A stretch of DNA of 64,000 bases from Mytilus trossulus (lineage: Eukaryota). The stretch lies in the NCBI RefSeq assembly GCF_036588685.1, contig NC_086378.1, forward strand, positions 20,646,001 to 20,710,000, given 5' to 3'. Both the position numbers and the translations under genes were made by a program. Shown one piece after another: positions 14,901 to 64,000 of the stretch. The notes under the pieces are model-generated. The model was not told where the DNA came from and did no database searches. It saw only the letters and a program-made list of their open reading frames with translations. Numbering within the stretch: the stretch's first letter is position 1; each line of letters opens with the position of its first letter.

Positions 14901-17900
14901 TGTCCAGACCAACTCCTGTGACAAGATGTCTAGGGAAGATTGAAACTGTTAAGTCAAGATGTGTAAGTTATACTATTGTTAATTTTGCGATATTGAGAAA
15001 AACCCTATTTAATTTACATAAAAAATTTCAAAAATGCAAGTTTGAATTATTGTGATCATAACCCTGTGACATTTTTGGCAATGATAAAAACATTGCAACG
15101 AAGTTATACTTTTTGAAACGTTAGACCCCACTCAAGGCTATAGTGAGTGACTATATTGCATTCATCTTGTGCATCGTTCCCATAGATGCCAACCATTACC
15201 ATTTTCCCGTAATTTTTCCGATTTTGCTATCAAAACTACGCTATTACGGTCAAAGTCGAATAGTTACGGATTCCCAATCATCGCCGTTCAATTGTGTAAA
15301 ATGCGGATTTTTATCATTGCTTTTTCGTCTTGGTCCAGTATTTAGTAAATGCCAATGTAATGCTTCCGGTTTCTCGGGAGTTATCGACCTATTGTTGTTT
15401 AACTAACTGACTTCCAAAGAGGGAAACTTGCATTTTATGAGTAGCTTTCCCCCTTTCTCTAATTCTCCTTGACAAAATGAAAATGTACGAGTCGAGAACA
15501 TTTAAACAATTAATGAATAGAATACAAACTACAGATAACATGTTTAATGAAACATGTTAGTGCACATCTGTTTGCAATCACTTGTTAGTATTTTTTATTG
15601 GTAAATGCATGTTTTTGAAAGATTACTGAAAACTTTTCAATAATACGGAAAATTTGATAGTTTGTTACTGAATGCCTTCAATGGGTCAAAAGGGGGTTGG
15701 CATCTATGCGTTCCATCTGTTCTTCCAAAATATATATTTCTTTCACAATTTTCTGAAGTACTTCTAAATGGATTGACTATGTATTTGGTAAGCTACTTGA
15801 TAGTGATGTTTTGTTAAGTTGTAGTACTTTTCAGTCGTAAGTTGTAGTGAGCACATTGCAGTTCAGTCTGAAACTTACTTTTTGTTACTAATATTTTAAA
15901 TTTTCATTATTTTCAATAAACTTACTGTGGATTTATTTATTTTCATTGGTATTATTTTATGTAGATCTAAAAAACCGTGAAAAATTGATATATTTAAATT
16001 TGTGGTTTATCTTTACACACAAAATCGATAATCCACAATATATTTAATTTGAACACAATATGAACTTTTTTGTTGAGAAAATCGTCACAAATTTTTCACT
16101 TCAAAATTCAAAGTATTTATACATATACTTCCAAAAAAAAGAAAAAAAGAAAGTGTTATAAAAGCCAGATTTGTTAAAGAATAATTTATCTACTATTTCA
16201 CTTTTCAGTCATCAACTTTCCGAAATAAGATTGACAAATATATAGAGAATACATCATCAAAGAACGGCGGACAGTACTGGCCTATTATTAAATCGGTAAC
16301 GATACGTATACCACATTGTTCAGTCTGTAGTAATGGTTGTACATTGGTAGACTTGCCAGGTGTTAGGGATTCTAATGCTGCCAGAGATAGGATAGCTAAA
16401 GATGTAAGTTATAACTTCTATTATTACATTGGTAGACTTGCCAGGTGTTAGGGATTCTAATGCTGCCAGAGATAGGATAGCTAAAGATGTAAGTTGTAAC
16501 TTCTATTATTACATTGGTAGACTTGCCAGGTGTCAGGGATTCTAATGCTGCCAGAGATAGGATAGCTAAAGATGTAAGTTGTAACTTCTATTATTACATT
16601 GGTAGACTTGCCAGGTGTCAGGGATTCTAATGCTGCCAGAGATAGGATAGCTAAAGATGTAAGTTGTAACTTCTATTATTACATTGGTAGACTTGCCAGG
16701 TGTCAGGGATTCTAATGCTGCCAGAGATAGGATAGCTAAAGATGTAAGTTGTAACTTCTATTATTACATTGGTAGACTTGCCAGGTGTCAGGGATTCTAA
16801 TGCTGCCAGAGATAGGATAGCTAAAGATGTAAGTTGTAACTTCTATTATTACATTGGTAGACTTGCCAGGTGTCAGGGATTCTAATGCTGCCAGAGATAG
16901 GATAGCTAAAGATATAAGTTGTAACTTCTATTATTACATTGGTAGACTTGCCAGGTGTTAGGGATTCTAATGCTGCCAGAGATAGGATAGCTAAAGATGT
17001 AAGTTGTAACTTCTATTATTACATTGGTAGACTTGCCAGGTGTCAGGGATTCTAATGCTGCCAGAGATAGGATAGCTAAAGATGTAAGTTGTAACTTCTA
17101 TTATTACATTGGTAGACTTGCCAGGTGTTAGGGATTCTAATGCTGCCAGAGATAGGATAGTTAAAGATGTAAGTTATAACTTCTATTATTACATTGGTAG
17201 ACTTGCCAGGTGTTAGGGATTCTAATGCTGCCAGAGATAGGATAGCTAAAGATGTAAGTTGTAACTTCTATTATTACATTGGTAGACTTGCCAGGTGTCA
17301 GGGATTCTAATGCTGCCAGAGATAGGATAGCTAAAGATGTAAGTTGTAACTTCTATTATTACATCGGTAGACTTGCCAGGTGTTAGGGATTCTAATGCTG
17401 CCAGAGATTATTTAGCTAAAGATGTAAGTTGTAACTTCTATTATTACATCGGTAGACTTGCCAGGTGTTAGGGATTCTAATGCTGCCAGAGATAGGATAG
17501 CTTAAGATGTAAGTTGTAACTTCTATTATTACATTGGTAGACTTGCCAGGTGTTAGGGATTCTAATGCTGCCAGAGACAGGATAGCTAAAGATGTAAGTT
17601 GTAACTTCTATTATTACATTGGTAGACTTGCCAGGTGTTAGGGATTCTAATGCTGCCAGAGATTATTTAGCTAAAGATGTAAGTTGTAACTTCTATTATT
17701 ACATTGGTAGACTTGCCAGGTGTTAGGGATTCTAATGCTGCCAGAGATAGGATAGCTAAAGATGAAAGTTATAACTTCTATTATTACATTGGTAGACTTG
17801 CCAGGTGTTAGGGATTCTAATGCTGTCAGAGATAGGATAGCTAAAGATGTAAGTTGTAACTTCTATTATTACATTGGTAGACTTGCCAGGTGTTAGGGAT

Positions 17901-20900
17901 TCTAATGCTGCCAGAGATAGGATAGCTAAAGATGTAAGTTGTAACTTCTATTATTACATTGGTAGACTTACCAGGTGTCAGGGATTCTAATGCTGCCAGA
18001 GATAGGATAGCTAAAGATGTAAGTTGTAACTTCTATTATTACATTGGTAGACTTGCCAGGTGTTAGGGATTCTAATGCTGCCAGAGATAGGATAGCTAAA
18101 GATGTAAGTTGTAACTTCTATTATTACATTGGTAGACTTGCCAGGTGTTAGGGATTCTAATGCTGCCAGAGATAGGATAGCTAAAGATGTAAGTTGTAAC
18201 TTCTATTATTACATTGGTAGACTTGCCAGGTGTTAGGGATTCTAATGCTGCCAGAGATAGGATAGCTAAAGATGTAAGTTGTAACTTCTATTATTACATT
18301 GGTAGACTTGCCAGGTGTTAGGGATTCTAATGCTGCCAGAGATAGGATAGCTAAAGATGTAAGTTGTAACTTCTATTATTACATTGGCAGACTTGCCAGG
18401 TGTCAGGGATTCTAATGCTGCCAGAGATAGGATAGCTAAAGATGTAAGTTGTAACTTCTATTATTACATTGGTAGACTTGCCAGGTGTTAGGGATTCTAA
18501 TGCTGCCAGAGATAGGATAGCTAAAGATGTAAGTTGTAACTTCTATTATTACATTGGTAGACTTGCCAGGTGTTAGGGATTCTAATGCTGCCAGAGATAG
18601 GATAGCTAAAGATGTAAGTTGTAACTTCTATTATTACATTGGTAGACTTACCAGGTGTTAGGGATTCTAATGCTGCCAGAGATTATTTAGCTAAAGATGT
18701 AAGTTGTAACTTCTATTATTACATTGGTAGACTTGCCAGGTGTTAGGGATTCTAATGCTGCCAGAGATTATTTAGCTAAAGATGTAAGTTGTAACTTCTA
18801 TTATTACATTGGTAGACTTGCCAGGTGTTAGGGATTCTAATGCTGCCAGAGATAGGATAGCTAAAGATGTAAGTTATAACTTCTATTATTACATCGGTAG
18901 ACTTGCCAGGTGTCAGGGATTCTAATGCTGCCAGAGACAGGATAGCTAAAGATGTAAGTTGTAACTTCTATTATTACATTGGTAGACTTGCCAGGTGTTA
19001 GGGATTCTAATGCTGCCAGAGATAGGATAGCTAAAGATGTAAGTTGTAACTTCTATTATTACATTGGTAGACTTGCCAGGTGTTAGGGATTCTAATGCTG
19101 CCAGAGATAGGATAGCTAAAGATGTAAGTTATAACTTCTATTATTACATTGGTAGACTTGCCAGGTGTTAGGGATTCTAATGCTGCCAGAGATAGGATAG
19201 CTAAAGATGTAAGTTATAACTTCTATTATTACATTGGTAGACTTACCAGGTGTTAGGGATTCTAATGCTGCCAGAGATAGGATAGCTAAAGATGTAAGTT
19301 GTAACTTCTATTATTACATTGGTAGACTTACCAGGTGTCAGGGATTCTAATGCTGCCAGAGATAGGATAGCTAAAGATGTAAGTTGTAACTTCTATTATT
19401 ACATTGGTAGACTTGCCAGGTGTTAGGGATTCTAATGCTGCCAGAGATAGGATAGCTAAAGATGTAAGTTGTAACTTCTATTATTACATTGGTAGACTTG
19501 CCAGGTGTTAGGGATTCTAATGCTGCCAGAGATAGGATAGCTAAAGATGTAAGTTGTAACTTCTATTATTACATTGGTAGACTTGCCAGGTGTTAGGGAT
19601 TCTAATGCTGCCAGAGATAGGATAGCTAAAGATGTAAGTTGTAACTTCTATTATTACATTGGTAGACTTACCAGGTGTTAGGGATTCTAATGCTGCCAGA
19701 GATTATTTAGCTAAAGATGTAAGTTGTAACTTCTATTATTACATTGGTAGACTTGCCAGGTGTTAGGGATTCTAATGCTGCCAGAGATTATTTAGCTAAA
19801 GATGTAAGTTGTAACTTCTATTATTACATTGGTAGACTTGCCAGGTGTTAGGGATTCTAATGCTGCCAGAGATAGGATAGCTAAAGATGTAAGTTATAAC
19901 TTCTATTATTACATCGGTAGACTTGCCAGGTGTCAGGGATTCTAATGCTGCCAGAGACAGGATAGCTAAAGATGTAAGTTGTAACTTCTATTATTACATT
20001 GGTAGACTTGCCAGGTGTTAGGGATTCTAATGCTGCCAGAGATAGGATAGCTAAAGATGTAAGTTGTAACTTCTATTATTACATTGGTAGACTTGCCAGG
20101 TGTTAGGGATTCTAATGCTGCCAGAGATAGGATAGCTAAAGATGTAAGTTATAACTTCTATTATTACATTGGTAGACTTGCCAGGTGTTAGGGATTCTAA
20201 TGCTGCCAGAGATAGGATAGCTAAAGATGTAAGTTATAACTTCTATTATTACATTGGTAGACTTACCAGGTGTTAGGGATTCTAATGCTGCCAGAGATAG
20301 GATAGCTAAAGATGTAAGTTGTAACTTCTATTATTACATTGGTAGACTTACCAGGTGTCAGGGATTCTAATGCTGCCAGAGATAGGATAGCTAAAGATGT
20401 AAGTTGTAACTTCTATTATTACATTGGTAGACTTGCCAGGTGTTAGGGATTCTAATGCTGCCAGAGATAGGATAGCTAAAGATGTAAGTTGTAACTTCTA
20501 TTATTACATTGGTAGACTTGCCAGGTGTTAGGGATTCTAATGCTGCCAGAGATAGGATAGCTAAAGATGTAAGTTGTAACTTCTATTATTACATTGGTAG
20601 ACTTGCCAGGTGTTAGGGATTCTAATGCTGCCAGAGATAGGATAGCTAAAGATGTAAGTTGTAACTTCTATTATTACATTGGTAGACTTGCCAGGTGTTA
20701 GGGATTCTAATGCTGCCAGAGATAGGATAGCTAAAGATGTAAGTTGTAACTTCTATTATTACATTGGCAGACTTGCCAGGTGTCAGGGATTCTAATGCTG
20801 CCAGAGATAGGATAGCTAAAGATGTAAGTTGTAACTTCTATTATTACATTGGTAGACTTGCCAGGTGTTAGGGATTCTAATGCTGCCAGAGATAGGATAG

Positions 20901-23900
20901 CTAAAGATGTAAGTTGTAACTTCTATTATTACATTGGTAGACTTGCCAGGTGTTAGGGATTCTAATGCTGCCAGAGATAGGATAGCTAAAGATGTAAGTT
21001 GTAACTTCTATTATTACATTGGTAGACTTGCCAGGTGTTAGGGATTCTAATGCTGCCAGAGATAGGATAGCTAAAGATGTAAGTTGTAACTTCTATTATT
21101 ACATTGGTAGACTTGCCAGGTGTTAGGGATTCTTATGCTGCCAGAGATAGGATAGCTAAAGATGTAAGTTGTAACTTCTATTATTACATTGGTAGACTTG
21201 CCAGGTGTTAGGGATTCTAATGCTGCCAGAGATAGGATAGCTAAAGATGTAAGTTGTAACTTCTATTATTACATTGGTAGACTTGCCAGGTGTTAGGGAT
21301 TCTAATGCTGCCAGAGATAGGATAGCTAAAGATGTAAGTTGTAACTTCTATTATTACATTGGTAGACTTGCCAGGTGTTAGGGATTCTAATGCTGCCAGA
21401 GATAGGATAGCTAAAGATGTAAGTTGTAACTTCTATTATTACATTGGTAGACTTGCCAGGTGTTAGGGATTCTAATGCTGCCAGAGATTATTTAGCTAAA
21501 GATGTAAGTTGTAACTTCTATTATTACATTGGTAGACTTGCCAGGTGTTAGGGATTCTAATGCTGCCAGAGATAGGATAGCTAAAGATGTAAGTTATAAC
21601 TTCTATTATTACATTGGTAGACTTACCAGGTGTTAGGGATTCTAATGCTGCCAGAGATTATTTAGCTAAAGATGTAAGTTGTAACTTCTATTATTACATT
21701 GGTAGACTTGCCAGGTGTTAGGGATTCTAATGCTGCCAGAGATTATTTAGCTAAAGATGTAAGTTGTAACTTCTATTATTACATTGGTAGACTTGCCAGG
21801 TGTTAGGGATTCTAATGCTGCCAGAGATAGGATAGCTAAAGATGTAAGTTATAACTTCTATTATTACATCGGTAGACTTGCCAGGTGTCAGGGATTCTAA
21901 TGCTGCCAGAGACAGGATAGCTAAAGATGTAAGTTGTAACTTCTATTATTACATTGGTAGACTTGCCAGGTGTTAGGGATTCTAATGCTGCCAGAGATAG
22001 GATAGCTAAAGATGTAAGTTATAACTTCTATTATTACATTGGTAGACTTACCAGGTGTTAGGGATTCTAATGCTGCCAGAGATAGGATAGCTAAAGATGT
22101 AAGTTGTAACTTCTATTATTACATTGGTAGACTTACCAGGTGTCAGGGATTCTAATGCTGCCAGAGATAGGATAGCTAAAGATGTAAGTTGTAACTTCTA
22201 TTATTACATTGGTAGACTTGCCAGGTGTTAGGGATTCTAATGCTGCCAGAGATAGGATAGCTAAAGATGTAAGTTGTAACTTCTATTATTACATTGGTAG
22301 ACTTGCCAGGTGTTAGGGATTCTAATGCTGCCAGAGATAGGATAGCTAAAGATGTAAGTTGTAACTTCTATTATTACATTGGTAGACTTGCCAGGTGTTA
22401 GGGATTCTAATGCTGCCAGAGATAGGATAGCTAAAGATGTAAGTTGTAACTTCTATTATTACATTGGTAGACTTGCCAGGTGTTAGGGATTCTAATGCTG
22501 CCAGAGATAGGATAGCTAAAGATGTAAGTTGTAACTTCTATTATTACATTGGCAGACTTGCCAGGTGTCAGGGATTCTAATGCTGCCAGAGATAGGATAG
22601 TTAAAGATGTAAGTTGTAACTTCTATTATTACATTGGTAGACTTGCCAGGTGTTAGGGATTCTAATGCTGCCAGAGATAGGATAGCTAAAGATGTAAGTT
22701 GTAACTTCTATTATTACATTGGTAGACTTGCCAGGTGTTAGGGATTCTAATGCTGCCAGAGATAGGATAGCTAAAGATGTAAGTTGTAACTTCTATTATT
22801 ACATTGGTAGACTTGCCAGGTGTTAGGGATTCTAATGCTGCCAGAGATAGGATAGCTAAAGATGTAAGTTGTAACTTCTATTATTACATTGGTAGACTTG
22901 CCAGGTGTTAGGGATTCTAATGCTGCCAGAGATAGGATAGCTAAAGATGTAAGTTGTAACTTCTATTATTACATTGGTAGACTTTTGCCAGGTGTTAGGG
23001 ATTCTAATGCTGCCAGAGATAGGATAGCTAAAGATGTAAGTTGTAACTTCTATTATTACATTGGCAGACTTGCCAGGTGTTAGGGATTCTAATGCTGCCA
23101 GAGATAGGATAGCTAAAGATGTAAGTTGTAACTTCTATTATTACATTGGTAGACTTGCCAGGTGTCAGGGATTCTAATGCTGCCAGAGATAGGATAGCTA
23201 AAGATGTAAGTTGTAACTTCTACTATTACATTGGTAGACTTGCCAGGTGTTAGGGATTCTAATGCTGCCAGAGATAGGATAGCTAAAGATGTAAGTTGTA
23301 ACTTCTATTATTACATTGGTAGACTTGCCAGGTGTTAGGGACTCTAATGCTGCCAGAGATAGGATTGCTAAAGATGTAAGTTATAACTTCTATTATTACA
23401 TTGGTAGACTTGCCAGGTGTTAGGGATTCTAATGCTGCCAGAGATAGGATAGCTAAAGATGTAAGTTGTAACTTCTATTATTACATTGGTAGACTTGCCA
23501 GGTGTCAGGGATTCTAATGCTGCCAGAGATAGGATAGCTAAAGATGTAAGTTGTAACTTCTATTATTACATTGGTAGACTTGCCAGGTGTTAGGGATTCT
23601 AATGCTGCCAGAGATAGGATAGCTAAAGATGTAAGTTGTAACTTCTATTATTACATTGGTAGACTTGCCAGGTGTTAGGGATTCTAATGCTGCCAGAGAT
23701 AGGATAGCTAAAGATTTAAGTTGTAACTTCTATTATTACATTGGTAGACTTGCCAGGTGTTAGGGATTCTAATGCTGCCAGAGATAGGATAGCTAAAGAT
23801 GTAAGTTGTAACTTCTATTATTACATTGGTAGACTTGCCAGGTGTTAGGGATTCTAATGCTGCCAGAGATAGGATAGCTAAAGATGTAAGTTGTAACTTC

Positions 23901-26900
23901 TATTATTACATTGGTAGACTTGCCAGGTGTTAGGGATTCTAATGCTGCCAGAGATAGGATAGCTAAAGATGTAAGTTGTAACTTCTATTATTACATTGGT
24001 AGACTTGCCAGGTGTCAGGGATTCTAATGCTGCCAGAGATAGGATAGCTAAAGATGTAAGTTGTAACTTCTATTATTACATTGGTAGACTTGCCAGGTGT
24101 TAGGGATTCTAATGCTGCCAGAGATAGGATAGCTAAAGATGTAAGTTGTAACTTCTATTATTACATTGGTAGACTTGCCAGGTGTTAGGGATTCTAATGC
24201 TGCCAGAGATAGGATAGCTAAAGATGTAAGTTGTCACTTCTATTATTACATTGGTAGACTTGCCAGGTGTTAGGGATTCTAATGCTGCCAGAGATAGGAT
24301 AGCTAAAGATGTAAGTTGTAACTTCTATTATTACATTGGTAGACTTGCCAGGTGTCAGGGATTCTAATGCTGCCAGAGATAGGATAGCTAAAGATGTAAG
24401 TTGTAACTTCTATTATTACATTGGTAGACTTGCCAGGTGTTAGGGATTCTAATGCTGCCAGAGATAGGATAGCTAAAGATGTAAGTTATAACTTCTATTA
24501 TTACATTGGTAGACTTACCAGGTGTCAGGGATTCTAATGCTGCCAGAGATAGGATAGCTAAAGATGTAAGTTGTAACTTCTATTATTACATTGGTAGACT
24601 TGCCAGGTGTTAGGGATTCTAATGCTGCCAGAGATAGGATAGCTAAAGATGTAAGTTGTAACTTCTATTATTACATTGGTAGACTTGCCAGGTGTCAGGG
24701 ATTCTAATGCTGCCAGAGATAGGATAGCTAAAGATGTAAGTTGTAACTTCTATTATTACATTGGTAGACTTGCCAGGTGTCAGGGATTCTAATGCTGCCA
24801 GAGATAGGATAGCTAAAGATGTAAGTTGTAACTTCTATTATTACATTGGTAGACTTACCAGGTGTCAGGGATTCTAATGCTGCCAGAGATAGGATAGCTA
24901 AAGATGTAAGTTGTAACTTCTATTATTACATTGGTAGACCTGCCAGGTGTTAGGGATTCTAATGCTGCCAGAGATAGGATAGCTAAAGATGTAAGTTGTA
25001 ACTTCTATTATTACATTGGTAGACTTGCCAGGTGTTAGGGATTCTAATGCTGCCAGAGATAGGATAGCTAAAGATGTAAGTTATAACTTCTATTATTACA
25101 TTGGTAGACTTGCCAGGTGTCAGGGATTCTAATGCTGCCAGAGATAGGATAGCTAAAGATGTAAGTTATAACTTCTATTATTACATTGGCAGACTTGCCA
25201 GGTGTTAGGGATTCTAATGCTGCCAGAGATAGGATAGCTAAAGATGTAAGTTATAACTACAGTCAAACCTATTATACTGGTAACCTCCATTTTAAAAGGA
25301 AAAAAACTGTGGTCAAGTCACTCTCTTCCTACTCCACTACTGTACATAGTACCTGTAAATATATCCTCAACTCAAATGATACCTTTCTTAGACTGTCTAT
25401 TTTCTCAGGTATCCATGCCAAGAGGACAGTTATATACCAACTGTTGGCTTTTGCCTGTTAATTGCTCTTTGGTTTGGTTATTGTCTTTTTGACACATTCC
25501 TCATTTCCATTCTCAATTTAATATACATTTGAATACTGTTGATTCATATTACTGTTTTATACAATTTTTGCGATTTTTAACATTTTTGGCAAAGATGAAT
25601 AAATAAGTTTACATTGTATAAACTTATTTGTTAAATCAATATCAGGAATTAGGTTTATACAAGCGAAGTTATACTTCTTGTCCCCAGAAATTCTTTATAA
25701 ACCAGTTTTACTGTAGTTTTCTGTGTAAGTAATAACTGATGAATTCTCATCTTAGAAAATTGACATAATGAATATCATTGAAGTTGGGATTACTTATACC
25801 CTCCCTGTAGTGTCTGTGTCCCATGGACACGGACACATTTCATTCATTTTCAGAATTTCTATCTGAAATCATTCTTGAAATGAGCTTCCCTGTAGTATTA
25901 CATGTTTATATATATAGTTTCCTTACAGCCAGCCAATCACACACTCAACTTTGTCAGTTTGTACGGTTAGAAATTGACACTTGTTGTTCTAAAATAACTT
26001 AATAATATGGATAAGATTCACAAACTAAAAATTGCTATTTTTTATGCCCCACCTACAATAGTAGAGGGGCATTATGTTTTCTGGTCTGTGCATCTGTTTG
26101 TTTGTCTGTCTGTCCGTTCGTTCGTCGGTCTGTCCGTTCGTTCATCCGTCTGTCCCGCTCCAGGTTAAAGTTTTTGGTCGAGGTAGTTTTTGATGAAGTT
26201 GAAGTCCAATCAACTTGAAACTTAGTATACATTTACCCTATGATATGATCTTTCTAATTTAAATGCCAAATTATAGTTTTTACCCAACTTCATGGTCCAC
26301 TGAACATAGAAAATGATAGTGCGAAGTTCAGGTTAAAGTTTTTGGTCAAGGTAGTTTTTGATGAAGTAGAAGTCAAATCAACTTGAAACATAGTATACAT
26401 GTTCCCTTTGATAAGATCATTCTAATTTTAATGCCAAATTAGAGAATTTACTCCAATTTCACGATCCACTAAACATATAAAATGATAGTGCGAGTGGGGC
26501 ATCTGAGTACTGTGGACACATTCTTGTTTTTGTAGTACTTGAAAAACTGTTCTGTAATTCTGGTGGTGGCTGAGGTCCATAGAGCTTCCACAAGTAAAAC
26601 AGCCAAAGAATTACTAGGGGACAACTTCCGTCGACAGCTACTCATGGATGGACAATATGGAAACGTAGCATTTATATGTACCAAGAATGATGTACTGCAG
26701 CCTTCAGAACTCATAAGGTAAAAATTATACCCAAACCATGTATATGGTAGACAATAATCCTATAAGTGCCAGACCAATTAGGGGTTGATCCAGTGTTGAT
26801 ATTGTCCTAACTATTTATGTTATTTAGACAAATGTGTAATTTATATCAACAATGAAAAGTTAGCATAATTTTGGGTTTCTAGGGGGATGTGCATTTCAGA

Positions 26901-47900: not shown

Positions 47901-50900
47901 CAATTCATCAGACAGATTTCTATTCATGATTATGATTTCAGGTATTTAATGATGCTAAGGATACAGAGATCCCAGCAGTCCGACAGTTCATTAGACAGAT
48001 TTCTAATCATGATTATGATTTCAGGTATTTGATGATGCTGAGGATACAGAGGTTCCAGCAGTCAGACAGTTCATTAGACAGATTTCTAATCATGATTATG
48101 ATTTCAGGTATTTGATGATGCTGAGGATACAGAGATCCAAGCAGTCAGACAGTTCTAATCATGATTTTGATTTCAGGTATTTAATGATGCTGAGGATACA
48201 GAGATCCAAGCAGTCAGACAGTTCATTAGACAGATTTCTAATCATGATTTTGATTTCAGGTATTTAATGATGCTGAGGATACAGAGATCCCAGCAGTCAG
48301 ACAGTTCATTAGACAGATTTCTAATCATGATTTTGATTTCAGGTATTTAATGATGCTGAGGATACAGAGATCCCAGCAGTCAGACAGTTCATTAGACAGA
48401 TTTCTAATCATGATTTTGATTTCAGGTATTTAATGATGCTGAGGATACAGAGATCCCAGCAGTCAGACAGTTCATTAGACAGATTTCTAATCATGATTTT
48501 GATTTCAGGTATTTAATGATGCTGAGGATACAGAGATCCCAGCAGTCAGACAGATCATTAGACAGATTTCTAATCATGATTATGATTTCAGGTATTTAAT
48601 GATGCTGAGGATACAGAGATCCCAGCAGTCAGACAGTTCATTAGACAGATTTCTAATCATGATTATGATTTCAGGTATTTGATGATGCTGAGGATACAGA
48701 GATTCCAGCAGTCAGACAGTTCATTAGACCCATTTCTAATCATGATTATGATTTCAGGTATTTGATGATGCTGAGGATACAGAGATCCCAGCAGTCAGAC
48801 AGTTCATTAGACAGATCTCTAATCAGAAGAGAGAAGAAGCCACAAAAAGACTCATACAGAATCTGGCAGTTTTTATCTATGACATACAAAACTACTTAAC
48901 AGAAAATGGTCTTACAGTATGTATTCTTTTTATTAAACTGTAAATAATTATAAACTAGTTTGCTATGACAGTGTCTTTGATGATGTTTTAGATTTCAGTA
49001 TATATAATCTGTATTTCTAAAATAGTTTGTTATGACAGTGTTTTGTTTGAACATATTTTATTTACTCAAAGTAAAATGGATTGGACACAAGTAAGCCATA
49101 ATGACAATGTTTTTGGTGATATTTAAAAATTTCAGTGTATGTAATGTATGTATGATGGGTCGTCGTAACAATGAATGGCTTACCTTTTGCTTTTAGTATA
49201 GAAAAAAAAAATATTCATATACCACTTCCCATTTAAGTTTTTGATATGCTTTTGAATTTTTTCTATTCCTGTAATTTTTCCAATAGGGCTTGATACAATG
49301 TATAACTACGATTTTATTTATGTGTTTTTTAGAACAAAAACGACAGGTTTACAGTACAATCAGCAGTAGAAGATTTTTCCTCAAGGTTACATGAAGAGTT
49401 ATCTCCCATACTAGAAAGCCTACAACAAGATGTTGGCCATGAACTAGACAGTAGTATAGCAGCACGATTAAACAGAGGTGTAGAGGTTGCTGTCAACAGT
49501 GCAATAGAAACCTGTAAAGGTTGGGGCTCAGCTGTAAGTTTACCATGATATATAGACAGAAAATGCATATCATTTGAATAAAGATTTCAATTTCAAATGC
49601 ATGAACTTTTAAAGAGGGATTTGAGCTACAATTTTGATAATGAAATTAAAACATTTGTTTCTATTGTTAATAATAACAATGGAATATAAGAATAATTTTT
49701 AGTTATGTGCAGTGAGTATAAAATATTGCTGATGTATTCTTGACTTGCATCTTTATAAACAAACAAAAAACGAGAACCATATGAACAAACGACAAATACT
49801 GGACATAAGATTTCAATGATAATAAGGCTAACCTTTGTCTTTTTCTAGTTTTAAATATTTATTTTAGGTAAAAAAAGAAGATAAAAACAAAGGAGGGTTA
49901 TGTTTCTCTACTTACAAAGCAACAGTACGTAGATATGGTAATTTTCAATCACCCACTGCAGGCTTGATCGACTTCAACGAAAATTTAGCAGAACCACTAA
50001 CTACGAGCATAAGTATAGTATGGACCAAATTCTTTAGGTGAGAACCATATCAAATAAGTGTAATTATTATGTTTGAAGATGCTTCTATTGTTTATTTAAA
50101 AACAAAACATAACGTTGGTATTTTAAATTTAAGTCATAGATACTGTAGAAACTTTAACTTTCATGGGGATTTAATTTCGTGGTTTCCAAAAAATTGAAGT
50201 GATTAATTGTATGTAGGTGAAATTTTCATGTTTTTTTTTTTATTTCGTGGTTTCCAAAAAATTGAAGTGATAATTATATGCAGGTGAAAATTTGATGTTT
50301 TTTTTTATTTGTCGATATATTCTTTCCACGAAATAAACGAATGTAAAACCTCATTCAAAATTTCTGCTTTTTCAGTATAGACTAACAGAGGATTCTCAAT
50401 TTTTTATCACCCCTTTCTGGAAGCTTGTACTCATCTCAATCTAGTTGTTTCATTAATTATTTTTGAGCAAGCCAAAAAAACTTAATTTTTTGCACATTTC
50501 ACATAAAAATGATGAAATATTTTATTCTTAAGAATGCATTTTTTTGTGTGCAGATTCAATATCATCATTGCCAGTTTATGGTTATGGAACATTTTGGATC
50601 ATAGGTTGCGGTCAAAGGTTTCCTCATCCTTTACGATGAGAAAAAAATGCATAAAATCCTTGTATTTTGACAATTTATCCAAAATATGCTGATTTTGAAG
50701 CAACAAGTGTTCTCTTAATGAAGAGCTTTATGTTGGAAAAGAACTAAGGCTTTTGAAATTGATTCATTAGCATGATATAAAAACCAAATTAAGGCCAACT
50801 TGAAATTTTATGTTAAAGTTGAAATTCAAGGCTGTAGTTGGCATGAGGTCACCATTGTGCGTTTTTATGTTAAGTTTTATCCAATTTTAGTGTTGATTTG

Positions 50901-53900
50901 TGGAACCTTCTTGAGAGATACAAGCTGAGAATACTGAGTACATTACGGTCCTTCACTGGCAAACTTTGTGTAGAACTGATGTCTTGTAATGTATCAAGAA
51001 ATCAATTGGATACAGCACAAAGACAATTCCATTTGATTTCTGGAACAAAGGTAATATTTACAAATACTGCTTTATTAGCATTTCAGTATTATTAAAAAGT
51101 ATTTATATAATAGTATATTTTTTCTTTTAACGTCTCCTCCATGGAATTTTTTTTCTCACTTACTTGATTCACATAGGATTTTTTCAATAAAAACAATTCA
51201 TCAAGTTTGAAGTATAAATGCATTGTGAAAACGAATATTTCATCAATGAAATTCAAGTCAGATATTCTTATGAAAGTCCTTTTCATATTGGATACTAATT
51301 TTTTTAAGTTTGATGAAGACATTTTGTATTCAAAGCGTTTCAACTGAGGTACTACACAGGTGTCAAAAGGCGTCATTATGGAGGAAAGGGGGTGGCGTCA
51401 AAGAGCGTCATTATGGAGGAAAGGGTTAAGCATAACTAAGAACAATACTATTAACCCAATCAACAGCTGAATGTACAATTAATAGTACCAATATATCCAC
51501 GGAGGGAACATATACATGTACAATTAACAATTAAGATTCATTTTGTCATGTCTGGTGATTTGTTTATTTGGCAATCGCCAGTCAGCAGGGTTTGAGAACA
51601 TCCTTTGTTTGACCTGCTAGTAGAATGTAATTTGTTAAAATATTCTTTTTCCCTTTTTTTGTCTTTTGGAAAATTTTGTTTGTGCTGTATTTAAACCCCT
51701 CTACCAAGAAATTTGTTTTGCATGCACACATATAAAAATTGCAGATTTAGCTTAGCTTTGAACATTGTTTTCAATTTAGACTTGTTGATATATATATATC
51801 TGTCAGTGCACTAAATCCATTTCAGTTAGGAAGGATTTATTATTATTATACCCCCGCTTTAAAAAAGGGGGGGTACTGTTTTACCTCTGTCAGTCCGTCC
51901 GTCCCATGAATATTTTTGTCGCATTTTTCTCAGGAACTACAATACAAGGATTTCTGAAATTTGGTTTCAGGGTTTATCTAAGTCAGCTATACCGTGTGAT
52001 CCGTTTTCAGATTAATCACTTGACAACTTCCTGTTTACCGAACACTTGTATGATTTTACACATGATAGCCAAGTTGAAAATTTTCGTCACATTTTTCTCA
52101 GGAACTACAATACAAGGATTTCTGAAATTTGGTTTCAAGATTTATATAAGTCAGCTTTACCGTGTGATGCGTTTTCAGATTCATCACTCGACAACTTCCT
52201 GTTTACCGAACACTTGCATATTTTTACACTATTAATATTATCCACATGCGGCGGGGGTATCATCAGTGAGCAGTAGCTCGCAGTTTCACTTGTTCATATT
52301 GTTATCTAGGATGCCTTATGATGGCTTGATACCAACCCCTCTTTTTGAAACTTTTTGCTTAGTTAAAAATGTCAGTTTCTGATAATTAGGTCCTAGGGGA
52401 TCGGTCATGGTAAATCAATGATATTGTGTGTGCAGTTGTATCAAATTAGCAGGTATCATATCTAGGAAATATTTTGGTAAGTTTTTTTTAATTTTATTTA
52501 CAAATACTCTTCTATTTTAATTAATAGAATTGCAAATGTATATTTTTTCTTTATGAATAATCTTTCATTTTAGTTGACAGAAATGATTAGGAATTTACAA
52601 GAGTTTGTTATAGAAAGACAGAGAGATATGAACAGGATATTTCCTCCAACTATTAAGGTAAGAGAGTTTGTTATAGAAAGACGGAGAGATATGAACAGGA
52701 TGTTTCCACCAAATATTCAGGTAAGAGAGTTTGTAATAGAAAGACAGAGAGATATGAACAGGATGTTTCCACCAACTATTCAGGTAAGAGAGTTTGTAAT
52801 AGAAAGACAGAGAGATATGAACAGGATGTTTCCACCAACTATTCAGGTAAGAGAGTTTGTAATAGAAAGACAGAGAGATATGAACAGGATGTTTCCACCA
52901 ACTATTCAGGTAAGAGAGTTTGTAATAGAAAGACAGAGAGATATGAACAGGATGTTTCCACCAACTATTCAGGTAAGAGAGTTTGTAATAGAAAGACAGA
53001 GAGATATGAACAGGATGTTTCCACCAACTATTCAGGTAAGAGAGTTTGTAATAGAAAGACAAAAAGATATGAACAGGATGTTTCCACCAACTATTCAGGT
53101 AAGAGAGTTTGTAATAGAAAGACAGAGAGATATGAACAGGATGTTTCCACCAACTATTCAGGTAAGAGAGTTTGTAATAGAAAGGCAGAGAGATATGAAC
53201 AGGATGTTTCCACCAAATATTCAGGTAAAGAGAGTTTGTTATAGAAATACAGAGGGATATGAACAGGATGTTTCCACCAACTATTCAGGTAAGAGAGTTT
53301 GTTATAGAAATACAGAGGGATATGAACAGGATGTTTCCACCAACTATTCAGGTAAGAGAGTTTGTTATAGAAAGACAGAGGGATATGAACAGGATGTTTC
53401 CACCAACTATTGAGGTAAAAGAGTTTGTTATAGAAAGACCGAGGGATATGAACAGGATGTTTCCACCAACTATTCAGGTAAGAGAGTTTGTAATAGAAAG
53501 GCAGAGAGATATGAACAGGATGTTTCCACCAACTATTCAGGTAAGAGAGTTTGTTATAGAAAGACAGAGGGATATGAACAGGATGTTTCCACCAACTATT
53601 CAGGTAAGAGAGTTTGTTAAAGAAAGACAGAGGGATATGACCAGGATGTTTCCACCAACTATTCAGGTAAGAGAGTTTGCTATAGAAAGACAGAGAGATA
53701 TGAACAGGATGTTTCCACCAACTATTCAGGTAAGAGAGTTTGTTATAGAAAGACAGAGAGATATGAACAGGATGTTTCCACCAACTATTCAGGTAAGAGA
53801 GTTTGTTATAGAAAGGCAGAGAGATATGAACAGGATGTTTCAACCAACTATTCAGGTAAGAGAGTTTGTAATAGAAAGACAGAGAGATATGAACAGGATG

Positions 53901-56900
53901 TTTCCACCAACTATTCAGGTAAAAGAGTTTGTTATAGAAAGACAGAGAGATATGAACAGGATGTTTCCTCCAACTATTCAGGTAAGAGAGTTTGTAATAG
54001 AAAGGCAGAGAGATATGAACAGGATGTTTCCACCAACTATTCAGGTAAGAGAGTTTGTTATAGAAAGACAGAGGGATATGAACAGGATGTTTCCACCAAC
54101 TATTCAGGTAAGAGAGTTTGTAATAGAAAGGCAGAGAGATATGAACAGGATGTTTCCACCAACTATTCAGGTAAGAGAGTTTGTTATAAAAAGGCAGAGA
54201 GATATGAACAGGATGTTTCCACCAACAATTCAGGTAAGAGAGTTTGTTATAGAAAGGCAGAGAGATATGAACAGGATGTTTCCACCAACTATTCAGGTAA
54301 GAGAGTTTGTAATAGAAAGGCAGAGAGATATGAACAGGATGTTTCCACCAACTATTCAGGTAAGAGAGTTTGTTATAGAAAGACAGAGGGATATGAACAG
54401 GATGTTTCCACCAACTATTCAGGTAAGAGAGTTTGTAATAGAAAGACAGAGAGATATGAACAGGATGTTTCCACCAACTATTCAGGTAAGAGAGTTTGTA
54501 ATAGAAAGGCAGAGAGATATGAACAGGATGTTTCCACCAAATATTCAGGTAAGAGAGTTTGTTATAGAAATACAGAGGGATATGAACAGGATGTTTCCAC
54601 CAACTATTCAGGTAAGAGAGTTTGTTATAGAAAGACAGAGGGATATGAACAGGATGTTTCCACCAACTATTGAGGTAAAAGAGTTTGTTATAGAAAGACA
54701 GAGGGATATGAACAGGATGTTTCCACCAACTATTCAGGTAAGAGAGTTTGTAATAGAAAGGCAGAGAGATATGAACAGGATGTTTCCACCAACTATTCAG
54801 GTAAGAGAGTTTGTTATAGAAAGACAGAGGGATATGAACAGGATGTTTCCACCAACTATTGAGGTAAGAGAGTTTGTTATAGAAAGACAGAGAGATATGA
54901 ACAGGATGTTTCCACCAACTATTCAGGTAAGAGAGTTTGTTATAGAAAGACAGAGGGATATGAACAGGATGTTTCCACCAACTATTCAGGTAAGAGAGTT
55001 TGTTAAAGAAAGACAGAGGGATATGACCAGGATGTTTCCACCAACTATTCAGGTAAGAGAGTTTGCTATAGAAAGACAGAGAGATATGAACAGGATGTTT
55101 CCACCAACTATTCAGGTAAGAGAGTTTGTTATAGAAAGACAGAGAGATATGAACAGGATGTTTCCACCAACTATTCAGGTAAGAGAGTTTGTTATAGAAA
55201 GGCAGAGAGATATGAACAGGATGTTTCCACCAACTATTCAGGTAAGAGAGTTTGTAATAGAAAGACAGAGAGATATGAACAGGATGTTTCCACCAACTAT
55301 TCAGGTAAAAGAGTTTGTTATAGAAAGACAGAGAGATATGAACAGGATGTTTCCTCCAACTATTCAGGTAAGAGAGTTTGTAATAGAAAGACAGAGAGAT
55401 ATGAACAGGATGTTTCCACCAACTATTCATGTAAGAGAGTTTGTTATAGAAAGACAGAGGGATATGAACAGGATGTTTCCACCAACTATTCAGGTAAGAG
55501 AGTTTGTAATAGAAAGGCAGAGAGATATGAACAGGATGTTTCCACCAACTATTCAGGTAAGAGAGTTTGTTATAGAAAGGCAGAGAGATATGAACAGGAT
55601 GTTTCCACCAACAATTCAGGTAAGAGAGTTTGTTATAGAAAGGCAGACAGATATGAACAGGATGTTTCCACCAACTATTCAGGTAAGAGAGTTTGTAATA
55701 GAAAGGCAGAGAGATATGAACAGGATGTTTCCACCAACAATTCAGGTAAGAGAGTTTGTTATAGAAAGGCAGAGAGATATGAACAGGATGTTTCCACCAA
55801 CTATTCAGGTAAGAGAGTTTGTTATAGAAAGACAGAGGGATATGAACAGGATGTTTCCACCAACTATTCAGGTAAGAGAGTTTGTTATAGAAAGACAGAG
55901 GGATATGAACAGGATGTTTCCACCAACTATTCAGGTAAGTGAGTTTGTTAAAGAAAGGCAGAGAGATATGAACAGGGTGTTTCCACCAACTATTCAGGTA
56001 ACAGAGTTTGTTATAGAAAGACAGAGAGATATGAACAGGATGTTTCCACCAACTATTCAGGTAAGAGAGTTTGTTATAGAAAGACAGAGGGATATGAACA
56101 GGATGTTTCCACCAACTATTCAGGTAAGAGAGTTTGTTATAGAAAGACAGAGGGATATGAACAGGATGTTTCCACCAACTATTCAGGTAAGAGAGTTTGT
56201 TATAGAAAGACAGAGGGATATGAACAGGATGTTTCCACCAACTATTCAGGTAAGAGAGTTTGTAATAGAAAGGCAGAGAGATATGAACAGGATGTTTCCA
56301 CCAACTATTCAGGTAAGAGAGTTTGTTATAGAAAGACAGAGGGATATGAAGAGGATGTTTCCACCAACTATTCAGGTAAGAGAGTTTGTTATAGAAAGAC
56401 AGAGAGATATGATCAGGATGTTTCCACCAACTATTCAGGTAAGAGAGTTTGTTATAGAAAGACAGAGGGATATGAACAGGATGTTTCCACCAACTATTCA
56501 GGTAAGAGAGTTTGTTATAGAAAGACAGAGAGATATGAACAGGATGTTTCCACCAACTATTCAGGTAAGAGAGTTTGTTATAGAAAGGCAGAGAGATATG
56601 AACAGGATGTTTCCACCAACTATTCAGGTAAGAGAGTTTGTTATAGAAAGACAGAGAGATATGAACAGGATGTTTCCACCAACTATTCAGGTAAGAGAGT
56701 TTGTTATAGAAAGGCAGAGAGATATGAACAGGATGTTTCCACCAACTATTCAGGTAAGAGAGTTTGTAATAGAAAGACAGAGAGATATGAACAGGATGTT
56801 TCCACCAACTATTCAGGTAAGAGAGTTTGTAATAGAAAGGCAGAGAGATATGAACAGGATGTTTCCACCAACAATTCAGGTAAGAGAGTTTGTAATAGAA

Positions 56901-59900
56901 AGACAGAGAGATATGAACAGGATGTTTTCTCCAACTATTCAGGTAAGAGAGTTTGTTATAGAAAGGCAGAGAGATATGAACAGGATGTTTCCACCAACTA
57001 TTCAGGTAAGAGAGTTTGTTATAGAAAGGCAGAGAGATATGAACAGGATGTTTCCACCAACTATTCAGGTAAGAGAGTTTGTTATAGAAAGACAGAGAGA
57101 TATGAACAGGATGTTTCCACCAACTATTCAGGTAAGAGAGTTTGTAATAGAAAGACAGAGAGATATGAACAGGATGTTTCCACCAACTATTCAGGTAAGA
57201 GAGTTTGTAATAGAAAGACAGAGAGATATGAACAGGATGTTTCCACCAACTATTCAGGTAAGAGAGTTTGTAATAGAAAGACAGAGAGATATGAACAGGA
57301 TGTTTCCACCAACTATTCAGGTAAGAGAGTTTGTTATAGAAAGACAGAGAGATATGAACAGGATGTTTCCTCCAACTATTCAGGTAAGAGAGTTTGTAAT
57401 AGAAAGGCAGAGGGATATGAACAGGATGTTTCCACCAACTATTCAGGTAAGAGAGTTTGTTATAGAAAGACAGAGGGATATGAACAGGATGTTTCCACCA
57501 ACTATTCAGGTAAGAGAGTTTGTTATAGAAAGGCAGAGAGATATGAACAGGATGTTTCCACCAACTATTCAGGTAAGAGAGTTTGTAATAGAAAGACAGA
57601 GAGATATGAACAGGATGTTTCCACCAACTATTCAGGTAAGAGAGTTTGTTATAGAAAGGCAGAGGGATATGAACAGGATGTTTCCACCAACTATTCAGGT
57701 AAGAGAGTTTGTTATAGAAAGGCAGAGAGATATGAACAGGATGTTTCCACCAACTATTCAGGTAAGAGAGTTTGTTATAGAAAGACAGAGAGATATGAAC
57801 AGGATGTTTCCACTAACTATTCAGGTAAGAGAGTTTGTTATAGAAAGACAGGGATATGAACAGGATGTTTCCACCAACTATTCAGGTAAAAGAGTTTGTT
57901 ATAGAAAGACAGAGGGATATGAACAGGATGTTTCCACCAACTATTCAGGTAAGAGAGTTTGTTATAGAAAGACAGAGAGATATGAACAGGATGTTTCCAC
58001 CAACTATTCAGGTAAGAGAGTTTGTTATAGAAAGACAGAGAGATATGAACAGGATGTTTCCACCAACTATTCAGGTAAGAGAGTTTGTTATAGAAAGACA
58101 GAGGGATATGAACAGGATGTTTCAACCAACTATTCAGGTAAGAGAGTTTGTTATAGAAAGACAGAGGGATATGAACAGGATGTTTCCACCAACTAATCAG
58201 GTAAGAGAGTTTGTTATAGAAAGACAGAGGAATATGAACAGGATGTTTCCACCAACTATTCAGGTAAGAGAGTTTGTAATAGAAAGGCAGAGAGATATGA
58301 GCAGGATGTTTCCACCAACTATTCAGGTAAGAGAGTTTGTTATAGAAAGACAGAGGGATATGAACAGGATGTTTCCACCAACTATTCAGGTAAGAGAGTT
58401 TGTTATAGAAAGACAGAGAGATATGAACAGGATGTTTCCACCAACTATTCAGGTAAGAGAGTTTGTTATAGAAAGACAGAGAGATATGAACAGGATGTTT
58501 CCACCAACTATTCAGGTAAGAGAGTTTGTTATAGAAAGACAGAGAGATATGAACAGGATGTTTCCACCAACTATTCAGGTAAGAGAGTTTGTTATAGAAA
58601 GACAGAGGGATATGAACAGGATGTTTCCACCAACTATTCAGGTAAGAGAGTTTGCTATAGAAAGACAGAGAGATATGAACAGGATGTTTCCACCAACTGT
58701 TCAGGTAAGAGAGTTTGTTATAGAAAGACAGAGAGATATGAACAGGATGTTTCCACCAACTATTCAGGTAAGAGAGTTTGTTATAGAAAGGCAGAGAGAT
58801 ATGAACAGGATGTTTCCACCAACTATTGAGGTAAGAGAGTTTGTTATAGAAAGACAGAGAGATATGAACAGGATGTTTCCACCAACTATTCAGGTAAGAG
58901 AGTTTGTTATAGAAAGACAGAGAGATATGAACAGGATGTTTCCTCCAACTATTCAGGTAAGAGAGTTTGTTATAGAAAGACAGAGAGATATGAACAGGAT
59001 GTTTCCACCAACTATTCAGGTAAGAGAGTTTGTAATAGAAAGGCAGAGAGATATGAACAGGATGTTTCCACCAACTATTCAGGTAAGAGAGTTTGTAATA
59101 GAAAGACAGAGGGATATGAACAGGATGTTTCCACCAACTATTCAGGTAAGAGAGTTTGTAATAGAAAGACAGAGAGATATGAACAGGATGTTTCCACCAA
59201 CTATTCAGGTAAGAGAGTTTGTTATAGAAAGACAGAGAAATATGAACAGGATGTTTCCACCAACTATTCAGGTAAGAGAGTATGTCATAGAAAGACAGAG
59301 AGATATGAACAGGATGTTTTCTCCAACTATTCAGGTAAGAGAGTTTGTCATAGAAAGGCAGAGAGATATGAACAGGATGTTTCCACCAACTATTCAGGTA
59401 AGAGAGTTTGTTATAGAAAGACAGAGAGATATGAACAGGATGTTTCCACCAACTATTCAGGTAAGAGAGTTTGTAATAGAAAGGCAGAGAGATATGAACA
59501 GGATGTTTCCACCAACTATTCAGGTAAGAGAGTTTGTAATAGAAAGACAGAGGGATATGAACAGGATGTTTCCACCAACTATTCAGGTAAGAGAGTTTGT
59601 AATAGAAAGACAGAGAGATATGAACAGGATGTTTCCACCAACTATTCAGGTAAGAGAGTTTGTAATAGGAAGACAGAGGGATATGAACAGGATGTTTCCA
59701 CCAACTATTCAGGTAAGAGAGTTTGTTATAGAAAGACAGAGAGATATGAACAGGATGTTTCCACCAACTATTCAGGTAAGAGAGTTTGTTATAGAAAGAC
59801 AGAGAGATATGAACAGGATGTTTCCACCAACAATTCAGGTAAAATAATGTTTATACTAAGTATGTATATGAATCAAATTCAGTGCAAACAACAAGAATGA

Positions 59901-63702: not shown

Positions 63703-64000
63703 AATTCATTGCTGACCGTACCATTATATATATTGAGTTGTGCAAATTCATTGCTGACAGTCCCATTACATATATTAAGTTGTGCAAATTCTTGCTGACA
63801 GTCCCATTACATATATTAAGTTGTGCAAATTCATTGCTGACAGTCCCATTACATATATTAAGTTGTGCAAATTCATTGCTGACAGTCCCATTACATATAT
63901 TAAGTTGTGCAAATTCTTGCTGACAGTCCCATTACATATATTAAGTTGTGCAAATTCATTGCTGACAGTCCCATTACATATATTAAGTTGTGCAAATTCA
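63703..64000. repeat. 41-42-bp tandem array running off the window end
   Basis: aattcattgctgacagtcccattacatatattaagttgtgca, about 7 copies visible. Confidence 0.93.

What the first reader, a model, noticed from the sequence alone, without database searches (positions are those of the whole stretch)
16340..59842. Four independent splice junctions of one gene have been amplified into tandem arrays of exon edge plus splice site
Seen: four unrelated repeat units (85, 44-47, 83 and 63 bp) each straddle an exon/intron boundary of the same GTPase gene, at about 105, 3, 11 and 115 copies. Polarity is consistent: donor arrays extend into the downstream intron with the first copy completing the exon, and the acceptor array extends upstream with the last copy opening the exon. 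About 17 kb of intron is therefore exon-derived and carries about 230 extra splice sites. Inference: four such cases in 18 exons suggests a recurrent process that seeds satellites at splice junctions, or strong filtering in which only junction-spanning duplications survive. Either would be an under-described route to intron expansion, cryptic isoforms and exon-array gene conversion. I cannot verify novelty against the literature.
Basis: partly seen in the sequence, partly recalled or inferred. Interest (0 to 1): 0.9.

Follow-up and report, generated by a model that had tools for sequence, protein, structure and literature searches.

The report
Splice-junction minisatellites in a GTPase gene
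Four tandem-repeat arrays in one mollusc GTPase gene are each built from an exon edge plus its splice site; this kind of repeat is known from a few human genes, but here it is unusually large, clustered in single genes and apparently over-represented across the genome.

Summary
Four arrays (85 bp x105, 44/47 bp x3, 83 bp x11.5, 63 bp x115) each span a real exon/intron junction of a Dynamin_N (SLIP-GC-like) GTPase gene. Homologous proteins run without a break across the first-copy donors and the last-copy acceptor. An RNA contig joins exon 45328-45509 directly to 48757, skipping the whole acceptor array. The two large units occur nowhere else in the 1.30 Gb genome, and a paralogue on another contig has no such arrays.

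The kind is not new. Human F7, IFI6, CBS, LMNB2 and PDGF carry minisatellites whose first monomer spans an exon-intron boundary (PMC1557585). The "polarity" is a geometric necessity, not a finding.

Three things stand out: copy number above 100, several junctions hit in one gene, and recurrence. First readers of this scan noted the same kind at other loci of this genome. I verified one, symplekin, which has five donor arrays of very different ages. Genome-wide, periodic donor-consensus triplets outnumber reversed-motif controls 1.8-4 fold (11 versus 2 loci on one chromosome), and an acceptor motif shows no excess.

The cause of this donor bias is unresolved. Not tested: read support for the two large arrays, and donor use in RNA.

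The parts
13897..14121 (+). P-loop (G1) exon of the Dynamin_N GTPase gene
   Evidence: Pfam Dynamin_N E=2e-8; homologues align
14750..14962 (+). GTPase exon
   Evidence: tblastn of P0013, P0003 and others; paralogue match
16209..16403 (+). G3 (DLPG) exon; its last 64 nt are the exonic part of copy 1 of the 85-bp unit; donor at 16403/16404
   Evidence: homologue residue 2450 ends at 16403 and 2451 starts at 26536
16340..25258 (+). 85-bp donor-junction array, 104.9 copies; 101 of 104 copies keep the donor 9-mer; internal 12-copy block duplications
26536..26718 (+). next exon after the 85-bp array
30434..30643 (+). exon whose donor was duplicated twice
30626..30779 (+). two nested duplications (44 bp and 47 bp) giving three donors
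45322..45513 (+). exon upstream of the acceptor array
   Evidence: RNA contigs X11 record 8 and X6 record 20
47868..48757 (+). 83-bp acceptor-junction array (intronic copies), about 10.5 extra acceptors, each with a branch-point-like motif and cag|GT
48758..48916 (+). exon opened by the last copy of the 83-bp unit; this acceptor is the one used in RNA
   Evidence: record positions 1186 and 1187 join 45509 to 48757
49336..49533 (+). exon
49868..50032 (+). exon
50891..51009 (+). exon seen only in RNA contigs
   Evidence: joint 50032 to about 50886
52574..52657 (+). exon; its last 58 nt are the exonic part of copy 1 of the 63-bp unit
   Evidence: homologue 2958-2985, then 2988 at 60325
52600..59842 (+). 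63-bp donor-junction array, 115 copies; 103 of 115 keep the donor 8-mer; stop-free in frame but with two frame-shifting steps
60325..60474 (+). next exon after the 63-bp array
63420..63542 (+). last exon seen in the window
649..4399 (+). in-frame coding arrays (60 bp x30; 24-bp family) inside a 1937-codon open frame upstream; context for the frame filter

Best explanation
These are four locus-private minisatellites, each founded by a small tandem duplication (44-85 bp) that happened to include a splice junction of a transcribed Dynamin_N GTPase gene. They then grew by unequal exchange or slippage of one to many units.

Shown:
- The units are exon edge plus splice site.
- The two large units exist only at this locus, and the acceptor exon's protein finds only this locus and the paralogue.
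- The 85-bp array contains repeated 12-copy blocks, the usual trace of unequal exchange.
- The paralogue lacks such arrays.
- The mRNA uses the last acceptor copy.
- Homologues hold one copy of each repeated peptide.

Inferred:
- The first donor copy is the one used. It is the only choice that keeps the frame, and it matches the 5'-to-3' first-donor rule shown for the human F7 IVS7 minisatellite.
- The inner copies are therefore silent intron, so the arrays are tolerated at any unit length.
- Arrays inside the coding exons upstream survive only with unit lengths that are multiples of three (36, 60, 24, 81 bp).

Beyond tolerance, donor-containing arrays are over-represented in this genome and cluster within particular genes. 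This points to a donor-sided bias in birth, growth or retention. I cannot identify its cause.
For: -: anatomy of the arrays.
- exon status and colinear homologues.
- RNA contig joins 45509 to 48757, plus three further GT..AG joints, in runs from two studies.
- the two large units are private to the locus; the acceptor exon's protein finds only this locus and the paralogue.
- the paralogue on C2 has no junction arrays.
- block duplications and near-complete retention of donor motifs.
- exonic arrays all have periods divisible by three.
- five donor arrays in symplekin with 98% to about 70% identity, which means repeated seeding over time.
- genome-wide motif counts.
- PMC1557585: human precedents and the first-donor rule.
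Against: - Donor use in RNA was not seen directly. The only read call covered 45250-51200.
- The lengths of the two large arrays rest on the assembly alone.
- The genome-wide counts are weighted by array size and use one consensus word. The locus-level comparison (11 versus 2) covers one chromosome, and those loci were not checked for being exon ends.
- The within-gene tests are biased, because both genes were chosen for showing the pattern.
Confidence: 0.8

Rival explanations
1. Chance plus tolerance only. The genome makes many minisatellites everywhere; those that span a junction are neutral and survive, and there is no bias toward donors.
For: Arrays are frequent in all three regions I could read, including non-junction ones beside the paralogue. 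The frame filter on exonic arrays is visible. With roughly 0.04 arrays per kb, some hundreds of junction hits are expected genome-wide by chance (my estimate).
Against: Donor-word triplets exceed reversed controls 1.8, 1.9 and 4.0 fold, and the other same-composition words more strongly. There are 11 versus 2 loci on C1 (P=0.02). Four to five junction arrays per gene occur in two genes, and a scan note reports six in a third gene.
Confidence: 0.3
2. A donor-sided mutational bias. Something tied to transcription or splicing at 5' splice sites in the germ line (polymerase pausing, replication conflicts, break repair that leaves small tandem duplications) seeds or expands arrays there, in particular genes, again and again.
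For: Donor excess without acceptor excess. Clustering in broadly expressed genes. Symplekin arrays of very different identity (98% down to about 70%), which means repeated events in one gene. Array lengths are close to whole numbers of units, as after simple duplications with little microhomology.
Against: No mechanism of this kind is documented as far as my four literature searches reach. Breakpoints inside exon and intron are not fixed: 2-75 exonic and 3-45 intronic nt. The acceptor deficit could equally be a selective filter.
Confidence: 0.3
3. Selection for extra donors. Reiterated U1-binding sites behind an exon help exon definition or protect long, transposon-laden introns, so such arrays are retained and grow.
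For: Nearly all copies keep an intact donor. The introns concerned are long and carry transposons.
Against: Donor positions are no less variable than other positions in the two large arrays. The high identity is explained by recent amplification. The array itself creates most of the intron length it would protect.
Confidence: 0.1
4. Assembly artefact in copy number. The arrays exist, but their lengths of about 7-9 kb are mis-assembled.
For: No read-level check of the 85-bp and 63-bp arrays was possible. Contig-based DNA runs break inside the 83-bp array.
Against: Copies differ by structured variants and block patterns, not by stutter. An independent DNA run under another organism label has raised word depth on the 83-bp array (about 78-198, against about 5-7 in single-copy flanks). 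Similar arrays occur at other loci.
Confidence: 0.1
5. The 63-bp array is read through as a coding repeat, giving protein-length variants in 21-residue steps.
For: The unit is 21 codons, and frames stay open for up to 1645 codons.
Against: Homologues hold one copy and continue in the exon at 60325. Two non-period steps (64 and 61 bp) shift the frame. Every copy carries a consensus donor. The reverse strand is open as well, so openness is a property of the unit.
Confidence: 0.03

Closest known systems
Human minisatellites whose first monomer spans an exon-intron boundary: F7 IVS7 (37 bp x5-9), IFI6/6-16 (25 pseudo-sites), CBS IVS13 (15-20), LMNB2 (100 bp x10-15), PDGF intron 4 (81 bp x16-18); PMC1557585
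   Same: Head-to-tail array. The first unit holds the authentic donor, so the donor is reiterated in the intron. The authentic, most upstream site is the one used (alone or mainly). Unit sizes are the same order.
   Different: Here there are 105 and 115 copies; four junctions of one gene are affected (five in symplekin); one array is on the acceptor side; the host is a mollusc genome where the type seems over-represented. Copy-number polymorphism and donor choice were not tested here.
Introns formed in or by internal tandem repeats (variable repeats at exon-intron boundaries, PMC2812944; 'intron-breeding' arrays, Zhuo et al. 2007, cited from memory)
   Same: Tandem repeats that carry splice signals and change exon-intron structure.
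   Different: There the repeats create new introns or alternative splicing within the array. Here an old, conserved intron position is kept and the array only lengthens the intron. Unit-internal introns would be 19-33 nt, too short.
Satellite-like arrays carried by Helentron or MITE elements in bivalves (PMC7492417, PMC3879986)
   Same: Short tandem arrays scattered in bivalve gene regions.
   Different: Those units are dispersed at many loci with transposon flanks. The 85-bp and 63-bp units occur at this locus only and are host exon sequence.
Recursive splice sites (juxtaposed 3' and 5' splice-site motifs; my own knowledge)
   Same: Each copy of the 83-bp unit reads pyrimidine-rich tract, cag, then GT.
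   Different: The downstream half (GTATTT) is a weak donor. No intermediate was looked for. The RNA contig shows only the final joint.

Membership tests
Junction-spanning minisatellite (F7 IVS7 type) | Head-to-tail array of a 10-100 bp unit | tested here: met
   TRF; segmentation
Junction-spanning minisatellite (F7 IVS7 type) | Outermost monomer overlaps the authentic splice junction, so the splice-site sequence is reiterated in the intron | tested here: met
   Boundaries read; exon ends fixed by colinear homologues and by RNA for the acceptor
Junction-spanning minisatellite (F7 IVS7 type) | Only (or mainly) the outermost site is used in mRNA | tested here: inconclusive
   Met for the acceptor array (RNA contig). 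For the three donor cases only homologue colinearity and frame logic; no RNA laid there
Junction-spanning minisatellite (F7 IVS7 type) | Copy number varies between individuals (VNTR) | not tested
Intron-forming tandem arrays | Introns begin and end within the repeats; each unit supplies both splice sites | tested here: not met
   Intron positions are shared with homologues; unit-internal donor-to-AG distances are 19-33 nt; no such joints
Dispersed transposon-borne satellite | The same unit at many genomic loci | tested here: not met
   Own-genome DNA searches find the 85-bp and 63-bp units only at C6:20.66-20.71 Mb; the acceptor exon's protein finds only this locus and the paralogue
Dynamin_N (SLIP-GC-like) GTPase, host gene | P-loop and DxxG motifs in a Dynamin_N domain | tested here: met
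   Pfam PF00350 on the exons 13900-14187 and 16209-16403; 130 relatives at E<=1e-10

The most novel reading that the evidence does not exclude
This mollusc genome has a donor-specific, gene-clustered process that repeatedly seeds and expands minisatellites at 5' splice sites. Several junctions are hit per gene, over a long time span, with arrays of up to more than 100 copies. On this reading, splicing- or transcription-coupled instability, or selection on reiterated U1 sites, is a sizeable route of intron growth.
Probability: 0.35. Interest if true: 0.8.

Novelty: new member of a known kind. Interest (0 to 1): 0.55.

Why it matters
A single junction-spanning minisatellite is a textbook curiosity. 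If the donor-sided excess and the clustering of four to six such arrays in single genes hold genome-wide, they would show a mutational or selective link between splice donors and tandem-repeat formation that has not been described. They would also explain part of the intron growth in this genome. Arrays of about 100 identical donors behind one exon are also a natural test of how the spliceosome picks one site among equals.

Tried and rejected
- **Random genome sample.** I planned to run TRF on 60 random 10-kb pieces for an unbiased array-by-donor test.
- **Same-species protein fragments across the 16403 donor**. The best hit was 71% identical, so this says nothing about donor use.
- **Extra conservation of donor positions within the arrays**. 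No signal; variation is dominated by a few block-borne variants.
- **Dispersed satellite or transposon origin of the units.** Rejected.
- **Coding read-through of the 63-bp array.** Rejected as unlikely.
- **Arrays inherited from the gene family.** The paralogue on C2 has none at its junctions.
- **DNA contigs** could not size the 83-bp array because k-mer contigs break there.
- **Literature searches** for a genome-wide or mollusc report of donor-anchored arrays found none. This is absence in the library searched, not proof of absence.
- **Joined coding sequence.** I did not build one.
Full report
**What is there.** Tandem Repeats Finder confirms four arrays at the stated coordinates:
- 16340-25258: 85 bp, 104.9 copies, 97% matches.
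- 30626-30779: 44 and 47 bp, about 3 copies.
- 47868-48825: 83 bp, about 11.5 copies.
- 52600-59842: 63 bp, 115.0 copies, 96% matches.

The window has no N. It lies at C6:20,646,001-20,710,000 of a 1.30 Gb assembly. Runs labelled as mollusc hold parts of it.

**The host gene.** The exons at 13.9 kb and 16.2 kb match Pfam Dynamin_N, with a P-loop and a DLPG G3 motif. A profile-free search of 1.8 billion representatives with the P-loop exon gave 130 relatives at E<=1e-10, many of them 2000-5000 residues long with the GTPase near the C-terminal third.

I aligned these proteins to the window exon by exon. They are colinear with exons at 13897-14121, 14750-14962, 16209-16403, 26536-26718, 30434-30643, 45322-45513, 48758-48916, 49336-49533, 49868-50032, 52574-52657, 60325-60474 and 63420-63542. 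I did not build a joined coding sequence; every search used single exons by reference.

**Each array spans a real junction.** In P0013, residue 2450 ends at 16403 and residue 2451 starts at 26536. Residue 2728 bridges 45513 and 48758. Residue 2985 ends at 52657 and residue 2988 starts at 60325. So homologues hold one copy of each repeated peptide, and the intron positions are old.

Reading the sequence gives the make-up of each unit:
- The 85-bp unit is 64 exonic plus 21 intronic nt.
- The short array is two nested duplications: 44 bp (18 exonic + 26 intronic nt) and 47 bp (2 exonic + 45 intronic nt).
- The 83-bp unit is 24 intronic plus 59 exonic nt.
- The 63-bp unit is 58 exonic plus 5 intronic nt.

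The donor 9-mer is intact in 101 of 104 copies of the 85-bp array. The donor 8-mer is intact in 103 of 115 copies of the 63-bp array.

**The polarity is not a finding.** This holds for any tandem array that contains a junction.

**RNA and DNA evidence.** I spent it on 45250-51200, and all four runs were Logan contigs.
- An RNA-like contig of 1747 nt (run X11) lies on 45328-45509, 48757-48916, 49336-49533 and 49868-50032 with adjoining record positions. The mRNA therefore uses the last acceptor copy and skips the whole 83-bp array.
- A run from another study (X6) shows the joints 48916>49333, 49533>49868 and 50032>~50886, all GT..AG. These reveal a further exon at about 50891-51009.
- DNA contigs break inside the array, as k-mer contigs do. 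A DNA run under another organism label has word depth of about 78-198 on array bins, against about 5-7 on single-copy flanks. The array is therefore multi-copy in independent data, but this gives no copy number.
- The two large arrays were not checked with reads, and donor choice in RNA was not seen. A search for same-species protein fragments across the 16403 donor found nothing closer than 71%.

**Origin and growth.** The 85-bp and 63-bp units occur only at this locus in the whole genome. A protein search with the acceptor exon found only this locus and the paralogue. One paralogous gene on contig C2 (74% nucleotide identity on the G3 exon) has the same exon ends but no junction arrays. The arrays are therefore private and arose after the gene duplication.

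Inside the 85-bp array, a run of about 12 copies with a characteristic variant pattern recurs two to three times. There is a single 87-bp step. The 63-bp array has two non-period steps, of 64 and 61 bp. This is the signature of growth by unequal exchange of multi-unit blocks, not of assembler stutter.

Array lengths are close to whole numbers of units (105x85-6, 115x63-2). That fits a simple founding duplication with little microhomology.

Donor positions are not more conserved than other positions. I therefore see no sign of selection on the inner donors.

**Tolerance.** The upstream 1937-codon open frame and the next large exon carry arrays of 36, 60, 24 and 81 bp, all multiples of three. 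The junction arrays are 85, 44, 47, 83 and 63 bp. This is what a frame filter predicts: duplications inside exons survive only in frame, whereas those that include a splice site become intron and are free.

For donors, the human F7 work shows that identical downstream pseudo-sites are functional yet silent, because the most upstream site is chosen (PMC1557585).

**Is it more than chance?**
- *Within this gene.* 5 of 16 duplication events span one of 26 junctions, where 0.8 are expected (P about 0.001). The window was selected for this, so the test alone is weak.
- *Other loci.* First readers of this scan noted the same kind at other loci of this genome: symplekin, DROSHA, MPRIP, MON2, RBMX2, a Kv channel, and a gene with six arrays.
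- *Symplekin, which I tested.* Pfam Symplekin_C locates the gene at C3:91.88 Mb. TRF on 60 kb and inspection show five donor-junction arrays:

| Array (bp x copies) | Note |
|---|---|
| 37 x 10.7 | |
| 20 x about 9 | degenerate |
| 37 x about 10 | split by an insertion |
| 49 x 24 | |
| 93 x more than 107 | runs off the fetched stretch |

  Each starts inside an open exon end, and two of these exon ends lie in the Symplekin_C match. Identities range from 98% to about 70%, so seeding recurred over a long time in one gene.
- *Motif counts.* I instead counted, genome-wide, triplets of a word at array-like spacing. The tool also reports the reversed word as a control.

| Word (type) | Gap between hits | Matches | Reversed control |
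|---|---|---|---|
| AGGTAAG (donor) | 13-43 | 4413 | 2397 |
| AGGATGA (same composition, control) | 13-43 | 1347 | 594 |
| AGGTAAGT (donor) | 12-42 | 550 | 290 |
| AGGTAAGT (donor) | 43-73 | 1770 | 446 |
| TTTCAGG (acceptor) | 13-43 | 869 | 1516 |

  Counted as distinct loci on contig C1, the donor 8-mer gives 11 arrays and its control 2 (P=0.02).

These counts are weighted by array size. They use one consensus word, and the loci were not checked for being exon ends. I read them as a moderate excess on the donor side only. They are not a measured enrichment.

**What I conclude.** The anatomy and the silent-intron reading are well supported. The kind is already known from human genes, so the claim of an under-described route is too strong for a single array.

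What remains unusual is the scale, the clustering of four to six arrays in single genes, the acceptor-side case, and the apparent donor-sided excess in this genome. A pure tolerance filter does not predict that excess. A mutational bias tied to transcription or splicing, or selection on reiterated donors, could each explain it. I have no evidence that decides between them.

**Limits.**
- There was no read-level support for the two large arrays and no RNA across the donor arrays.
- There was no orthologous comparison.
- The genome-wide test was by motif only.

Noticed in passing
window 34015-44947: Large transposon inside the intron. It has a minus-strand 617-aa ORF with a Mutator-like/MULE transposase match (37736-39589), a THAP-domain ORF (44223-44663, minus strand) and a plus-strand ORF matching the P2RX7 C-terminal domain (34273-34638). 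Scan notes call it Kolobok.
   Followed up: partly
window 131-216, 649-2435, 3196-4399, 10310-10544: Coding tandem arrays of 36, 60, 24 and 81 bp inside very long open frames upstream of the GTPase exons. All periods are multiples of three. Whether these exons belong to the same transcript was not shown.
   Followed up: partly
window 31255-33635 and L027-L031 (reverse-complement coordinates 25463-28131): A repeat element of about 2.4 kb, about 90% identical at the translated level (tblastx), sits in an intron here. In the C2 paralogue it starts directly after the G3 exon.
   Followed up: no
window 47941-48757: Every acceptor copy reads cag followed at once by GT, preceded by a branch-point-like ctaat. 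This is the motif layout of recursive splice sites. Only the final joint was seen in RNA.
   Followed up: partly
window 63703-64000: A 42-bp array (at least 7 copies) runs off the window end. It starts 160 bp after the last exon, has no donor motif, and does not span a junction.
   Followed up: no
L039 and beyond (G000:C3:91879987 onward): The 93-bp donor array behind a Symplekin_C exon has more than 107 copies and exceeds 10 kb. Its end was not reached.
   Followed up: partly
G000:C1:104226188-104226683: A 33-bp array turned up in a control search. Its unit reads like a pyrimidine tract, tag, then an exon-like GATGATG. It may be an acceptor-junction array.
   Followed up: no
L027-L031, reverse-complement coordinates 7497-7772: A 26-bp x10.6 array near the paralogue with a strong donor-like motif on the opposite strand. 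Gene context unknown.
   Followed up: no
window 52600-52662 versus the rest of the 63-bp array: The exon copy differs from the array consensus at three positions, one of them unique to it. The true exon is therefore slightly set apart from the array.
   Followed up: partly
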